Part shown: positions 4,540 to 9,327 of the stretch, one piece after another | How positions within the stretch are numbered: position 1 is the first letter of the stretch | Layout of the letters: every line of letters starts with the position of its first letter | Sequence record: KJ019143.1 | DNA length: 64,000 bases | Direction: 5' to 3' (one strand) | Notes under the pieces: model-generated | Told to the model about the DNA's origin: nothing | Seen by the model: the letters and a program-made list of their open reading frames with translations, nothing else | Database searches by the model: none | Made by a program: the position numbers and the translations under genes

Positions 4540-5250
4540 ATGGCGTTACCTAAGATTGCCAAGATAACCTATGAACTGGTTATTCCTTCCACTGGCAAAA
4601 AGATTAAGTATAGACCTTTTCTAGTTAAAGAAGAGAAAGTTCTTATTCTTGCACAAGAATCTGGTTCCCAAACGGAAATGACCAGAGCTATTAAAGATGT
4701 TATCTCCGCTTGTGTTCAAACTCGTGGATTTAAGGTCGATCAGATGGCAACCTTTGATATTGAGTATGTCTTCTTAAACATTAGGGGGAGATCTGTCGGT
4801 GAATCTGTGGATGTTATCGTCACCTGTCCAGATGACGAAAAGACTACAGTTCCCGTTACTATTTATCTAGATGAAATTGAGGTTATCTTTGATGAAAACC
4901 ACGAGGCAAACATCAAGTTAGATGATACTTACTCTGTACAGATGAAGTATCCCACTATGGAACAGGTCATGGAAGCAGATGCTGACAACATCTCCATCCA
5001 AGAAAGTCTAGAACTGATTGCCAAGTGTATTGATCAGATTTATAGTGAAGAGGAATCTTTCGCCGCTTCTGATTCTTCACTGAAGGAACTTGTATCATGG
5101 GTAGAGGATCTGGAACCTAAACAGTTTACTAAACTAGAGAACTTCTTCACCACCATGCCTAAGTTATCACACACTATTAATGTGATGAACCCAGAAACAG
5201 ATGTTGAAAGTTCTGTCGTATTGGAGGGACTGGGTAGTTTTTTCGCGTAA
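4540..5250 (+). CDS. gp26: Baseplate hub subunit / assembly chaperone
   Basis: KYRPFLVKEEK, FDIEYVFLNIRGRSVGE, VTCPDD, FFTTMPKL, LEGLGSFF; ATAAATA at 4503-4509. Confidence 0.9.
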   Translation: MALPKIAKITYELVIPSTGKKIKYRPFLVKEEKVLILAQESGSQTEMTRAIKDVISACVQTRGFKVDQMATFDIEYVFLNIRGRSVGESVDVIVTCPDDEKTTVPVTIYLDEIEVIFDENHEANIKLDDTYSVQMKYPTMEQVMEADADNISIQESLELIAKCIDQIYSEEESFAASDSSLKELVSWVEDLEPKQFTKLENFFTTMPKLSHTINVMNPETDVESSVVLEGLGSFFA

Positions 5251-5280
5251 GTATGGCTCACATGGATCTAGAGTCATACT
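5238..5280 (+). promoter_or_regulatory. Putative -1 programmed ribosomal frameshift signal
   Basis: In-frame T TTT TTC (5238-5244), 5-nt spacer, 10-bp hairpin 5250-5280, GGAGGG 9 nt upstream. Confidence 0.75.
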
Positions 5281-5432
5281 ATAAGACCAACTTTGCACTG
5301 ATGCAACACCACAAGTACAACCTCTCCGATATTGAAGATATGATCCCATGGGAGAGGGACATCTATGTTACTCTACTCAAGAACTGGATTGAGGAAGAGG
5401 AACAACGAATCGCACAACAGCAGAAAGGATGA
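5253..5432 (+). CDS. gp51: Baseplate hub assembly catalyst (59 aa, not in ORF track)
   Basis: Manual translation MAHMDLESYYKTNFALMQHHKYNLSDIEDMIPWERDIYVTLLKNWIEEEEQRIAQQQKG. Confidence 0.88.
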   Translation: MAHMDLESYYKTNFALMQHHKYNLSDIEDMIPWERDIYVTLLKNWIEEEEQRIAQQQKG

Positions 5433-7366
5433 GTTTATTCACCTCCGCTACTTCAGGTGTAGATCCCCAAACAGGATCTTACCTCTCTAAGGAACAAAGA
5501 GTTGCGATGTTCCAATCCTCCCGTGGTCGTGGAGGTGGTGGAAGCGCTACGCCTGAAGGTAAAAGAGGTAAAGTTGCACCACAGAATGCCATTGTTGTAG
5601 CAAACAAGATGGCACAGGTGGTTCAGACACTCCAGACAAATACACAGGAGACTGTTCAAGCTGTTAATGTAAAGGTTCAAGAGAACGCACAAAATATTGA
5701 AAACCTCTACAAATCTGTTCAGAATAACAGATCAGCAGAGGCTAAGGAAGAAAAAGCAGAGACAAAACTACTCAGAGGTGAGAGGGAGACAGCCCTAAGA
5801 TCAGGTAAGGAGAAACTTATTGAGGGCATGTCATCAGCTGTTGCTGGTCTTGTCGGTGTAGGTAGGAGTGCAGCTGATGCTGCACTTAAACCCGTTATGG
5901 GTTTCTGGGAAAAGATTAAAGGATTCTTGCTTAATATAGCAGCAGCTTGGGCTATTAAGAATCTCCCAATTATTATGGGTTATGTTGAAGATTTTGTTAG
6001 TTGGTTAGGTGACTTTAAGAGTTGGTTGCCTAAGTCTCTTACAGGTCTTCGTGGTGTATGGTCTATTGCGGATAATATTATCCGAGCAATGTGGCGCGGT
6101 TTCAGTCGTATTGGTGGCACAATATTCCGTATAGCTACATGGTTAACTAGAAAGCTATTTTCACTACTCAAGAGAATATTTGCACCTATTGGTAGATTTA
6201 TTTCAAGAATAGTAGGTGGTATTGTTGACTTCCTGAGACCAATAGTATCTAGAGCACTGAGAGGTTTGGGTGATGCACTTGGTGGAATGGGGAACTCCAT
6301 CAATCGAGCTTTTGGTGGTGGTGGTGGTAGTTCCAGTAGTCTAGGTGGAGTTAAAGGTGGCGCTGGTGTTGATCCTGGTCAGAAGGCAATAGCTGGAGCT
6401 GCCGAAGAAGGTGGCGGTCTTTTTGCAAGGTTCAACAGATTCCTCAAAGGGCTGACGCAGAAAGGCAAGGCTGCTTTTTCTAAAGGTCAAGAGTTATTTG
6501 CGAGTGGTGGTAAAAAGATTCAGCAGGGTATAGGTGCAATACAGGAAACCACCACTGGAATTAAACCGCAACCCGAAAAACATGCGGGGTGGCTTAAAAA
6601 AGCACTAACTCCTATTGGTGACCTTCTTCCCGGTATGAAGGGAGCACTTAGTGGTATAGGTAAACTAGTCAATGGTGTTCTTAAAGTTGTTCCTGGTATT
6701 GGTTTTGCTATTGATTTGGCTCTAAACAAGGGAATCAATGGTGATGACTGGACTACTGCTATTGTAGCCGCTCTTGGTTCCTCTGTCGTTGGTGGTATTG
6801 GTATTGCTGGTGGTGCTAAGATTGGTGGTGGAGTTGGTTTTGCTCTTGGTACTGCTATTCCTGGTATAGGTAACATTGTTGGTGCCGCTATTGGTGCCGG
6901 TCTTGGTGGTATTATCGGTGGTATTGCTGGTGGTGCTCTTGGTGATACTGCAGCCAGAATGGGTCTGGATGCATTAAATATAGGAGAAAGTGCTCAGTCG
7001 GAAAACAAACCAGCTGATGTGAGTTCTCCTGGAGGTGCGATGGATCTTGAGGGTGGTGCTCACGAAACAGTACCTGCTAGTTCTGTGGGAGCTACAACTA
7101 ACAATAACTCAACATCAGGTATGGTTAGTAGTGCAACCAGTGGTAGTAGCACACCAGAAGGTATGTCAGAACCAAACGGTGGTAATACTACTTCTGTTGA
7201 AACCATTAATCTAGCTCCTAATGTTGTAGATAGTGGTAAGGAGGATAGTTCTGGAAAACTTGAAGTGCCGTCTATGATTGATGATAACCCCTTCTGGCAG
7301 ACATCAGATCCAGCTTCTGATATGTACAGGAGTTTCGCTTCAACTGAATATGAGTTGGTACACTAA
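5429..7366 (+). CDS. Tape-measure-like tail/baseplate protein
   Basis: Follows gp26/gp51; coiled-coil N-terminus, amphipathic helices, glycine-zipper segment. Confidence 0.6.
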   Translation: MSLFTSATSGVDPQTGSYLSKEQRVAMFQSSRGRGGGGSATPEGKRGKVAPQNAIVVANKMAQVVQTLQTNTQETVQAVNVKVQENAQNIENLYKSVQNNRSAEAKEEKAETKLLRGERETALRSGKEKLIEGMSSAVAGLVGVGRSAADAALKPVMGFWEKIKGFLLNIAAAWAIKNLPIIMGYVEDFVSWLGDFKSWLPKSLTGLRGVWSIADNIIRAMWRGFSRIGGTIFRIATWLTRKLFSLLKRIFAPIGRFISRIVGGIVDFLRPIVSRALRGLGDALGGMGNSINRAFGGGGGSSSSLGGVKGGAGVDPGQKAIAGAAEEGGGLFARFNRFLKGLTQKGKAAFSKGQELFASGGKKIQQGIGAIQETTTGIKPQPEKHAGWLKKALTPIGDLLPGMKGALSGIGKLVNGVLKVVPGIGFAIDLALNKGINGDDWTTAIVAALGSSVVGGIGIAGGAKIGGGVGFALGTAIPGIGNIVGAAIGAGLGGIIGGIAGGALGDTAARMGLDALNIGESAQSENKPADVSSPGGAMDLEGGAHETVPASSVGATTNNNSTSGMVSSATSGSSTPEGMSEPNGGNTTSVETINLAPNVVDSGKEDSSGKLEVPSMIDDNPFWQTSDPASDMYRSFASTEYELVH

Positions 7367-9327
7367 TGGCACAACCACAAATTGCTGCAAACAAAACTAA
7401 AGCTCTGAGGATTGGTCAGAGGTTGATGACTGGTGCCAAGAGTTTTGGTAAAGGTGTCAGGAATAGTGTTGATACTTCACAACAGGTCATCACTCAGAGT
7501 GCTCGTAAGATCAAATCAGATCAGAAAAGAATCAACACAGAGAATAGGAAGCAGCAAAGGTTTGAGGAAGCAGTACGGGAAGAAACAGAGAGAAGACAGA
7601 AATCCCTAACAAAGGGTGCATATGGTGTTGGTAGTGCTGCCAAGAAGCTAACCGAGAAGGTTGTGGTGGATCCAATGAAAGCTATTTGGAACATTATTGC
7701 TGCTTGGGCTATTAAGAATCTCCCAACTATTGTTGATGAAGTTAGAAAATTTGTAAAGAAAGTGAGGATTGTAATAGCTGCTATTAATAACGCGTTTAGA
7801 GCAACTGGTAACCTATTTAAGGGGTGGTTATCATATGGACAGGCTTGGCTGACAAATATGGTTACCTTTGACTGGGGTGACTCCACAGGTAGGTTGGAAG
7901 ACGCACAGGCTGAAATAGATAATAGTTATGATGAATTAGATGCAAGTTGGAATACTATCTACAATGTATGGGGTAAGGAGGAAGAAGAGTTAGACAAAAT
8001 GCTAACTTGGTTGGATAGTGGTAAGACTGTTAAACAGGCTACTGATGCTATTACACAAGGTATTCCATTGCCACAGACACCTGCTTTTGGTGATGGTAGT
8101 AGGGAAGGTGGCGGAGGTTATGGTGGATCAGGCATCCAAATGAGTGCTGATGAACAGCAACTTACAGAGTCATTGATTGCTGGTGAGGAGGGGGTAAGAA
8201 CCAAAGCATATCAGGATAGTGAAGGTATTTGGACAATTGGTTATGGTCAGACTAGAATTAATGGTAGAGCAGTAAAACCAAGTGATACAATAACAAAAGC
8301 ACAAGCATTGAGTGGTTTTAGAGGTGCTCTCGCAGAACACCAACAAAGGGCAATCAATCAACTTGGTGAGGAGAGATGGTCACAACTGGACGCAAGATCT
8401 AGAGCAGTTCTCACCTCTATAACATACAACTATGGTAGTATTCCTGGTAGAGTTCTACCTGCTGCTAAAACTGGTAATGCTGAAGACATTGCTGTAGCGA
8501 TGAATAGTTTGTATGGAGATAATAGAGGAGTTCTAAAAGGTAGAAGACAGAGAGAGCAATCTATTCTCAGAGGCGGTACTTCTTCCTACTTAGATAAAGA
8601 CTTTATGGCTGGTGGTCAATTTGCAGGCTCTGGTACTGGTCCTCTAGTCATGGGTGGTGGAAATGAATCTACTTCAGGTTCAATATCTTCATCTGGAGGC
8701 ACAACCAACACAACTGCAATGAAGAGAGGTGATATGGTTGGTGGTTTTACTGTTAGTTCTGCATTTGGACGTAGAGCTGCACCTACTGCTGGTGCTAGTT
8801 CTAATCATGGGGGTCTTGATATTGCTACTCCACAAGGAACATACTTAGCTTTTGATGTTGATGTTGAGATTATGTTCGCTGGTTCAGCTGGTGGATATGG
8901 ATATGTCATTGATGCTTGGTCGGCATCATTAGGAATTCAGTTCCGTTGTGCTCACATGTCAGTATTAATGTGTAACCCAGGACAGAAAGTTCGTGCTGGA
9001 ACTGCTGTTGGTAGAACTGGTGGTGCAGTGGGAAGTCGTGGAGCTGGTACATCCACTGGACCTCATCTTCACTTTGAAGTGAGTAATCAGAAGGGTTCTG
9101 CTAACTATGGTGGTTCAAATAGTGCTAGTATGTTAGCCAGATACGCAAAACACTTAATCCTTAGCTCATCTAAACCACAACCACAGTCACTCAGACCAGC
9201 TACAGTGAGTTCTTCCTCACAGCAAACCGCTAATCAACTTAACTCTTCTGCTTCCTCCAGAAGAACTAATGGTAGGAGAACTGATCAAAAAATAATACTA
9301 ATCAAGGAAAATACTATTATTAAATAA
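7366..9327 (+). CDS. Tape-measure-like protein with lysozyme (GH24-like) and M23 peptidase domains
   Basis: EEGVRTKAYQDSEGIWTIGYG lysozyme motif; HGGLDIA...HMS...GPHLHFEV M23 motif. Confidence 0.82.
   Translation: MAQPQIAANKTKALRIGQRLMTGAKSFGKGVRNSVDTSQQVITQSARKIKSDQKRINTENRKQQRFEEAVREETERRQKSLTKGAYGVGSAAKKLTEKVVVDPMKAIWNIIAAWAIKNLPTIVDEVRKFVKKVRIVIAAINNAFRATGNLFKGWLSYGQAWLTNMVTFDWGDSTGRLEDAQAEIDNSYDELDASWNTIYNVWGKEEEELDKMLTWLDSGKTVKQATDAITQGIPLPQTPAFGDGSREGGGGYGGSGIQMSADEQQLTESLIAGEEGVRTKAYQDSEGIWTIGYGQTRINGRAVKPSDTITKAQALSGFRGALAEHQQRAINQLGEERWSQLDARSRAVLTSITYNYGSIPGRVLPAAKTGNAEDIAVAMNSLYGDNRGVLKGRRQREQSILRGGTSSYLDKDFMAGGQFAGSGTGPLVMGGGNESTSGSISSSGGTTNTTAMKRGDMVGGFTVSSAFGRRAAPTAGASSNHGGLDIATPQGTYLAFDVDVEIMFAGSAGGYGYVIDAWSASLGIQFRCAHMSVLMCNPGQKVRAGTAVGRTGGAVGSRGAGTSTGPHLHFEVSNQKGSANYGGSNSASMLARYAKHLILSSSKPQPQSLRPATVSSSSQQTANQLNSSASSRRTNGRRTDQKIILIKENTIIK

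What the first reader, a model, noticed from the sequence alone, without database searches (positions are those of the whole stretch)
5223..5432. Complete -1 ribosomal frameshift signal fusing gp26 to gp51 just upstream of the tape-measure-like genes
Seen in sequence: gp26 ends ...AGT TTT TTC GCG TAA, giving an in-frame X XXY YYZ heptamer T TTT TTC (5238-5244). A 5-nt spacer is followed by a 10-bp hairpin AGTATGGCTC/GAGTCATACT (5250-5259 with 5271-5280, one G-U, 11-nt loop) that buries the gp51 ATG. An SD-like GGAGGG lies 9 nt upstream (5223-5228). The -1 frame reads TTT TTT CGC GTA AGT ATG straight into gp51, giving a 297-aa fusion. Established: lambda G/GT and P2 E/E' tail chaperones use this logic before the tape-measure gene, and dnaX uses SD plus hairpin stimulators. 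Inference: T4-type gp26/gp51 here act as a G/GT-like chaperone pair, which I do not know to be described for this group.
Basis: partly seen in the sequence, partly recalled or inferred. Interest (0 to 1): 0.88.

Follow-up and report, generated by a model that had tools for sequence, protein, structure and literature searches.

The report
Conserved gp26-gp51 tail-chaperone frameshift site
The end of the cyanophage gene gp26 carries a real, deeply conserved signal that lets some ribosomes slip back one base and read on into gp51, making a short and a long tail-assembly chaperone as phage lambda does; this was already described for T4-like phages in 2022.

Summary
The window is Synechococcus phage ACG-2014f.
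- in-frame T TTT TTC (5238-5244)
- GGAGGG 9 nt upstream
- a 5-nt spacer
- a 10-bp hairpin (5250-5280) that holds the gp51 ATG
- gp51 in the -1 frame

Comparative evidence is strong.
- 262 of 265 gp26 loci (41 of 44 clusters at 70% identity) keep an in-frame T TTT TTY, followed by a homologous gp51-like -1 ORF.
- 114 of those 262 loci have no start codon at the junction.
- T4 and Melville, whose gene 51 is a separate gene, code the same Phe-Phe non-slippery.
- In the window, only 1 of 25 in-frame Phe-Phe pairs is slippery.
- The upstream SD-like GAGG is backed by synonymous-codon bias.
- The hairpin covaries in the window's clade but is absent in many lineages.
- T4 gp51 equals a gp26-like N-part plus the small gp51 as its C-domain, which is the lambda G/GT logic.

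This is not new. Vladimirov, Gautam and Davidson (Virology 2022) identified the T4-like tail assembly chaperone genes, and citing papers mention their poly-T shift signals. Public records for this phage still annotate two separate genes. No expression data were available.

Verdict: real and ordinary. Interest is low to moderate.

The parts
4540..5250 (+). gp26, the short tail/hub assembly chaperone form (TAC-N), 236 aa
   Evidence: PF12322 T4_baseplate, E 1.3e-68. phrog_150, E 4.9e-79, profile positions 5-232 of 282. AF2 model pLDDT 86.
5223..5228 (+). SD-like GGAGGG, 9 nt 5' of the heptamer; candidate upstream stimulator
   Evidence: Sequence. At the homologous Glu-Gly codons, GAG is used in 98 of 133 unique junctions against 30% gene-wide. 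GGR is used in 120 of 173 against 35%. At cluster level, p = 0.002 and 0.001.
5235..5237 (+). [quoted passage not shown]
   Evidence: Sequence.
5238..5244 (+). Slippery heptamer T TTT TTC in gp26 phase
   Evidence: Kept as T TTT TTY in 262 of 265 loci and 41 of 44 clusters at 70% identity. Unique among the 25 in-frame Phe-Phe pairs of the window.
5245..5250 (+). One free sense codon plus the gp26 stop codon; 5245-5249 is the 5-nt spacer
   Evidence: The sense codon varies freely and all three stop codons occur. The stop lies one codon after the heptamer in 226 of 262 loci.
5250..5280 (+). 10-bp hairpin with an 11-nt loop that contains the gp51 ATG (5253-5255)
   Evidence: -12.7 kcal/mol. It sits at the 2.4th percentile of local windows. 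83.9% of cells are paired in 80 unique junctions of the ATG-bearing group, with double changes at three pairs (UA 41, AU 15, GC 5 at one of them). 0 of 500 shuffles reach the observed values.
5253..5432 (+). gp51 (Gp51_C-like domain), 59 codons from its ATG; the -1 frame is open from 5238
   Evidence: phrog_634, E 4.8e-31, and phrog_150 profile positions 240-277 of 282. Aligns to T4 gp51 residues 206-242. Homologous -1 ORF of 50-79 codons in all 262 loci.
5429..7366 (+). 645-aa ORF whose ATG overlaps the gp51 stop (ATGA); tape-measure-like, weakly supported
   Evidence: phrog_3405 (unknown function), with weak hits to tape measure phrog_167, E 6e-07. An ORF of about 570-650 aa sits in the same place in distant lineages; ValKK3's one also weakly hits a tape measure family. 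No PDB or NCBIfam match.

Best explanation
gp26 and gp51 are the two parts of the tail (hub/tube) assembly chaperone of a T4-like cyanophage. They are expressed like lambda G/GT.

Most ribosomes end at the gp26 stop and make the 236-aa short form. A minority slip back one base on T TTT TTC (5238-5244), with the two Phe tRNAs re-pairing on TTT TTT. They then read on in the -1 frame through gp51 and give a 297-aa long form, which has the gp26 body plus a Gp51_C tail.

In this clade the shift is probably helped by an SD-like GGAGGG 9 nt upstream and a hairpin 5 nt downstream. The gp51 stop overlaps the start of the next, tape-measure-like gene.

**Shown here:** the signals, their conservation and the homology relations.
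**Inferred:** that the shift happens, that it is ribosomal, its rate, and the chaperone role. The role rests on T4 genetics and the 2022 paper.
For: - **Heptamer:** in-frame T TTT TTY in 262 of 265 loci and 41 of 44 clusters at 70% identity. These include Kyanoviridae, Emdodecavirus, Menderavirus, Busanvirus, Chakrabartyvirus, Schizotequatrovirus and Ishigurovirus.
- **Wobble base before it:** the codon before the heptamer always ends in T although its amino acid varies (Ser, Asp, Asn, Ala, Gly, Thr).
- **Natural control:** T4 and Melville have gene 25 after gene 26 and a separate gene 51. They code the same Phe-Phe as TTC TTT.
- **Window control:** 1 of 25 Phe-Phe pairs is slippery.
- **Downstream ORF:** the gp51-like domain is always in the -1 frame. 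114 of 262 loci have no ATG, GTG or TTG at the junction, which is 28 of 41 clusters without an ATG.
- **T4 gp51:** it matches the gp26 family profile over positions 13-280 of 282 (E 2.6e-84). Its C-end matches the small gp51.
- **SD-like element:** synonymous-codon bias.
- **Hairpin:** covariation in the window's clade.
- **Literature:**
Against: - No expression data of any kind were available.
- The hairpin alone is not exceptional (z = -1.5). It is missing in many lineages that keep the heptamer (25 of 41 clusters are above the 10th percentile), so it is not essential to the mechanism.
- Half of the loci, the window included, do have an ATG 2 nt after the stop. Free gp51 by re-initiation cannot be excluded.
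- A T6-T8 run could also support transcriptional slippage.
- The structural likeness of gp26 to a solved tail assembly chaperone is weak (HK97 2ob9: probability 0.60, E 0.55).
- The tape measure identity of the next gene is weakly supported.
- I could not read the 2022 paper itself.
Confidence: 0.8

Rival explanations
1. The frame change is made by RNA polymerase, not the ribosome. Slippage on the T run adds one U to a share of the transcripts, and these encode the fusion in one frame.
For: - The site is a homopolymer.
- 10 of 41 clusters have runs of 7-8 T.
- Many lineages lack any stable 3' structure.
[quoted passage not shown] PRFect's summary, however, says this means separate short and long genes.
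Against: - 31 of 41 clusters cap the run at exactly 6 T with a C. From my own knowledge (the Atkins et al. 2016 review), that is shorter than runs known to slip efficiently.
- TTC is preferred at the last codon (88%) against 28% gene-wide, which shortens the run.
- The SD-like bias and a hairpin at 5-nt spacing are ribosome-directed features.
- Chaplin et al. cite the T4-like poly-T sites as -1 frameshift signals.
Confidence: 0.1
2. There is no recoding. gp26 and gp51 are two separate proteins, and gp51 is made from its own ATG by termination-reinitiation. The T run only reflects a conserved Phe-Phe motif.
For: - The window has an ATG 2 nt after the stop, and 144 of 262 loci have an ATG within 8 codons.
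- Vibrio phage K369 has no heptamer and an ATG overlapping the stop.
- Public records annotate two CDSs.
Against: - 114 of 262 loci have no start codon, yet the whole gp51 domain is conserved in frame.
- The wobble T before the Phe-Phe is kept across five or more different amino acids.
- T4 and Melville keep the Phe-Phe without the slippery coding.
- The window prefers TTC for Phe, and 24 of 25 Phe-Phe pairs are not slippery.
- The ATG lies inside the hairpin stem with no SD before it.
- T4 makes the long form as one protein.
Confidence: 0.07
3. The frame offset is a sequencing or assembly error, or a decayed single gene.
For: One low-coverage metagenome contig carries both parts in one frame as deposited.
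Against: The same offset is found in 262 independent loci from isolates and metagenomes, and in 45 near-identical ACG-2014f genomes. 119 of the 120 closest database proteins have the length of the short form (235-236 aa).
Confidence: 0.01

Closest known systems
[quoted passage not shown]
   Same: Same genes (26 and 51). Same idea of a short and a long form, and poly-T -1 shift signals at the end of the short gene, as reported by citing papers. My own tests agree.
   Different: I could not read the paper. I do not know whether it covers cyanomyoviruses, the SD-like bias, the clade-specific hairpins, or the count of start-less lineages.
Phage lambda G / GT (also P2 E / E+E', Mu gp41 / gp41'); Xu, Hendrix, Duda 2004
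   Same: -1 shift near the end of the gene just before the tape measure gene. Short major and long minor forms share the N-part. This row is from my own knowledge.
   Different: No detectable sequence homology. The slippery site differs, from my own knowledge. gp26 is about twice the size of lambda G. The fold likeness to a solved chaperone (HK97, 2ob9) is weak.
Phage T4 itself: genes 26 and 51
   Same: Homologous proteins. T4 gp51 is a gp26-like part plus the Gp51_C domain.
   Different: In T4 the two forms are separate, divergently transcribed genes. The Phe-Phe at the end of gp26 is coded non-slippery and gene 25 follows.
E. coli dnaX -1 frameshift cassette
   Same: Three-part layout: an SD-like element about 10 nt upstream, a heptamer, and a hairpin a few nt downstream. 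This row is from my own knowledge; the layout in the window is.
   Different: Different heptamer. In dnaX the shifted frame ends almost at once, whereas here it adds a 62-residue domain. The hairpin here is clade-specific.
Vandenendeviridae (Pakpunavirus) chaperone locus, Chaplin et al. 2025 (PMC12846349)
   Same: T-rich shift motif at the end of the short form, a start-less -1 continuation, and public annotation as two genes.
   Different: A different phage family and an unrelated gene sequence.

Membership tests
T4-like gp26 / gp51 chaperone pair | Short form belongs to the gp26 family | tested here: met
   PF12322, E 1.3e-68. phrog_150, E 4.9e-79. BFVD fold hits to gp26 proteins with TM up to 0.87.
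T4-like gp26 / gp51 chaperone pair | Downstream part is homologous to the C-domain of T4 gp51 | tested here: met
   phrog_634 holds both the window gp51 (E 4.8e-31) and T4 gp51 residues 147-246 (E 1.2e-23). hhalign to T4 gp51 residues 206-242: E 6.8e-05, probability 63.5%. The precomputed Pfam name is Gp51_C.
T4-like gp26 / gp51 chaperone pair | A long form holding both parts exists in nature as one protein | tested here: met
   T4 and Melville gp51 match phrog_150 over positions 13-281 of 282. The gp26 family profile aligns to T4 gp51 residues 12-185.
Programmed -1 ribosomal frameshift cassette | In-phase X XXY YYZ heptamer inside the overlap of the two frames | tested here: met
   5238-5244, within a shift window of 5238-5247. 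Conserved in 262 of 265 loci.
Programmed -1 ribosomal frameshift cassette | Heptamer conserved at synonymous sites beyond the protein constraint | tested here: met
   NNT TTT in all 262 loci against about 47% expected per lineage, giving 3e-14 over 41 clusters. T4 control. Window control.
Programmed -1 ribosomal frameshift cassette | Downstream ORF conserved but without its own start | tested here: met
   This holds for the family: 114 of 262 loci have no ATG, GTG or TTG. The window's own copy does have an ATG.
Programmed -1 ribosomal frameshift cassette | 3' stimulatory structure at 5-9 nt | tested here: inconclusive
   Present and covarying in the window's clade. 16 of 41 clusters fall below the 10th percentile (KS p = 0.0006). 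Many lineages have none.
Programmed -1 ribosomal frameshift cassette | Trans-frame product is made | not testable with these tools
   No proteome, ribosome profiling or transcript data are at hand.
Phage tail assembly chaperones (lambda G/GT type) | Gene pair lies directly before the tape measure gene | tested here: inconclusive
   A 645-aa ORF follows with an ATGA overlap. It has only weak tape measure profile hits (E 6e-07) and no PDB or NCBIfam match.
Phage tail assembly chaperones (lambda G/GT type) | Chaperone fold as in solved examples | tested here: inconclusive
   No significant PDB hit. The highest-probability hit is the HK97 tail assembly chaperone 2ob9 (probability 0.60, TM 0.43 by target, E 0.55). 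There is no sequence-level PDB relative.
Phage tail assembly chaperones (lambda G/GT type) | Needed for tail assembly but absent from the virion | not testable with these tools
   This rests on T4 genetics and structures (my own knowledge) and on a remark in PMC9024508 that T4 gp26 and gp51 are proposed chaperones or cofactors.

The most novel reading that the evidence does not exclude
The shift site itself is ancient and invariant, but its helpers are not. Different T4-like lineages have evolved unrelated 3' hairpins at the same place (at least two stem solutions and one palindrome), or none at all. An SD-like element is held by synonymous codon choice. In clades with an ATG buried in the hairpin, three products (short form, long form, and free gp51 by re-initiation) may be set in a tuned ratio. 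If the 2022 paper did not treat this, it would be a modest new point about how frameshift stimulators turn over around a fixed slippery site.
Probability: 0.25. Interest if true: 0.45.

Novelty: already known. Interest (0 to 1): 0.3.

Why it matters
The site explains how T4-like phages other than T4 make the long chaperone form. It also shows that the small gp51 ORFs are domains of a fusion, not free-standing genes.

The practical value lies in annotation.
- Records for this phage and its relatives list two genes.
- Other records truncate gp51 to an internal ATG or omit it entirely.
- The invariant heptamer with a start-less -1 ORF is a clean positive set for frameshift predictors.

It opens no new question, because the chaperone identity and the poly-T signal are already published.

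Tried and rejected
- **Rfam:** a scan of 5100-5450 found nothing.
- **Pfam and NCBIfam:** the local Pfam-A copy and NCBIfam have no model for the small gp51.
- **PDB:** a sequence search with a gp26 family profile, and with the 645-aa ORF, gave only chance-level hits.
- **Literature:** four searches pairing gp26 or gp51 with frameshift or slippery terms and two pairing them with tail assembly chaperone found nothing relevant. The prior art came up only through a Pakpunavirus paper. The 2022 paper itself is not held.
- **Structure prediction:** I used a shallower alignment of database relatives instead.
- **Sequencing artefact:** considered and rejected.
- **Phe-Phe motif as the cause of the T run:** considered and rejected.
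- **Synonymous-codon randomisation of the hairpin:** not run, to avoid generating altered phage sequences.

No sequence joined across the shift was built. -1-frame stretches were translated on their own.

My notebook records that contig's T-run length.

Full report
**Identity and anatomy.** The window is Synechococcus phage ACG-2014f (KJ019143.1, 100% identity, same coordinates). The record lists a baseplate hub subunit and a baseplate hub assembly catalyst as two separate CDSs.
- ORF 4540-5250 is a gp26 family protein: PF12322, E 1.3e-68, and phrog_150.
- ORF 5253-5432 (59 aa) hits phrog_634. It also hits positions 240-277 of the 282-position gp26 family profile phrog_150. That was a first hint that some family members carry both parts in one protein.
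  - T TTT TTC at 5238-5244, in phase
  - GGAGGG at 5223-5228
  - the gp26 stop at 5248-5250
  - a 5-nt spacer
  - a 10-bp hairpin, 5250-5259 with 5271-5280, that holds the gp51 ATG
- A -1-frame stop at 5235-5237 and the 0-frame stop bound the shift window to 5238-5247.
- The gp51 stop overlaps the ATG of a 645-aa ORF (5429-7366).

**Is it more than chance?** By itself the hairpin is ordinary: -12.7 kcal/mol, z = -1.5, and 14 of 200 shuffles fold as well. A heptamer at one of some sixty gene junctions could also be luck. The comparative data settle the matter.
- I collected 277 loci: 18 annotated phage records, 258 IMG/VR contigs, and the window's own stretch.
- Of these, 265 had a complete gp26 3' end.
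- 262 of the 265 have T TTT TTY in phase within the last codons of gp26. That is 41 of 44 clusters at 70% protein identity.
- The lineages are as far apart as Kyanoviridae, Sinorhizobium phiM19, Stenotrophomonas YB07, Acidovorax ACP17, Pseudomonas pf16, Rhizobium IC12, Vibrio ValKK3, Aeromonas 65 and Cronobacter S13.
- The codon before the heptamer codes Ser, Asp, Asn, Ala, Gly or Thr but always ends in T. The codon after it and the stop codon vary freely.
- With the family's own codon usage, the chance that 41 lineages keep NNT TTT is about 3e-14.
- In the window, only 1 of 25 in-frame Phe-Phe pairs is coded this way. This phage prefers TTC.
- T4 and Salmonella phage Melville are a natural control. 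In both, gene 25 follows gene 26 and gene 51 lies on the other strand. Both keep the Phe-Phe but code it TTC TTT.

**The downstream frame.**
- In all 262 loci a homologous ORF of 50-79 codons follows in the -1 frame.
- In 114 loci there is no ATG, GTG or TTG in the first codons after the heptamer. That corresponds to 28 of 41 clusters without an ATG.
- In those lineages the conserved N-part of the domain can only be reached from gp26.
- Where the window has Met, other lineages have Leu or Phe. The ATG may therefore be simply a hydrophobic codon.
- Public annotation reflects the problem. The gp51 part is missing, truncated to an internal ATG, or reduced to a 27-aa fragment in several records.

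**Stimulators.**
- *Upstream.* At the Glu-Gly codons homologous to the window's GGAGGG, GAG is used in 98 of 133 unique junctions against 30% gene-wide. GGR is used in 120 of 173 against 35%. A Glu four codons further up follows the background. At cluster level, p = 0.002 and 0.001.
- *Downstream.* The 42 nt after the heptamer fold unusually well in 16 of 41 clusters, falling below the 10th percentile of windows from the same locus (KS p = 0.0006). The window's lineage is at the 2.4th percentile. Other lineages, some of them large, have no structure.
- *Covariation.* In 80 unique junctions of the ATG-bearing group, 83.9% of the cells of the window's helix are paired. Three pairs show double changes (UA 41, AU 15, GC 5 at one of them). 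None of 500 shuffles reached the observed pairing or covariation, and the slid controls pair at only 31-53%.
- Other lineages use a different stem or a palindrome at the same place.
- The hairpin is therefore a real helper, but a clade-specific one.

**What the proteins are.**
- T4 gp51 (249 aa) matches the gp26 family profile over positions 13-280 of 282 (E 2.6e-84). T4 gp26 stops at position 235.
- A profile of diverse gp26 proteins aligns to T4 gp51 residues 12-185 (probability 92%). A profile of the small gp51 ORFs aligns to residues 206-242 (E 6.8e-05).
- T4 therefore encodes the short and the long form as two genes. Most other T4-like phages encode the long form through the frame change. 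This is the lambda G/GT logic.
- The gp26 model is confident (pLDDT 86). It has no significant PDB neighbour, but the highest-probability hit is the HK97 tail assembly chaperone (probability 0.60, TM 0.43, E 0.55). That is suggestive only.
- The next gene is tape-measure-like only by position, size and weak profile hits.

**Mechanism.** I favour ribosomal -1 slippage, for three reasons:
1. The T run is capped at six by a C in 31 of 41 clusters.
2. TTC is chosen at the last codon far above background.
3. The two helpers act on ribosomes.

Transcriptional slippage on the T run remains a live rival (about 0.1). Free gp51 by re-initiation may coexist with the fusion in ATG-bearing clades. No expression data were available, so the product itself is inferred.

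**Prior art.** Chaplin et al. [quoted passage not shown] They cite Vladimirov, Gautam and Davidson, Virology 2022; 566:9-15. The PRFect paper (PMC10885494) summarises the same work: some T4-like phages carry one short gene and one longer fusion gene instead of frameshifting. A Pfam family named Gp51_C also exists. I could not read the 2022 paper. I therefore cannot say whether the SD-like bias, the hairpin turnover or the cyanophage cases are covered there.

**Verdict.** Its remaining value is in annotation and, perhaps, in how the stimulators have evolved.

Noticed in passing
L005 (S-PRM1), L006 (S-RIM8), L090 (Aeromonas 65), L094 (Cronobacter S13), L097 (Acidovorax ACP17): The gp51 part is unannotated, cut to an internal ATG, or reduced to a 27-aa fragment in public records. 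None of the 18 records I opened annotates a joined CDS.
   Followed up: partly
L088 (Vibrio phage K369), about 2690-2940: This is the only lineage outside Tevenvirinae seen without the T run. Its gp51-like ORF is still in the -1 frame but starts at an ATG overlapping the gp26 stop.
   Followed up: no
28 IMG/VR loci, for example L204, L235, L253: The gp26 frame runs on for 8 codons after the heptamer instead of 1, so the overlap of the two frames is longer in this group.
   Followed up: no
L227, L230, L215 and others; L136, L141 and others: Unrelated hairpin solutions sit at the same distance from the heptamer: a GC-rich stem built from Leu and Glu codons, and a 14-nt palindrome.
   Followed up: partly
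L277 (ENA contig, about 1.6x coverage), gene 749-1651; protein P0095: A single low-coverage metagenome contig carries gp26 and gp51 in one frame as deposited (300 aa, PF12322 plus Gp51_C). It is probably a homopolymer read error, but a natural fusion is not excluded.
   Followed up: partly
window 7366-9327: A 653-aa ORF with a phage lysozyme domain and an M23 peptidase domain follows directly after the tape-measure-like ORF. It is a likely tail-associated lysin.
   Followed up: no
window 5429-7366 and the equivalent ORFs in L090, L094, L095, L096: The ORFs of about 570-650 aa after gp51 fall into different PHROG families of unknown function across lineages. Only weak tape measure hits appear, in two of them.
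   Followed up: partly
BFVD hits of the gp26 model: The gp26 fold recurs in myoviruses far from T4: Bacillus SP-15, Campylobacter CP220, Ralstonia phiRSL1, Pseudomonas PaBG and Leptospira LE4. Some of these proteins are much longer (370-670 aa).
   Followed up: no
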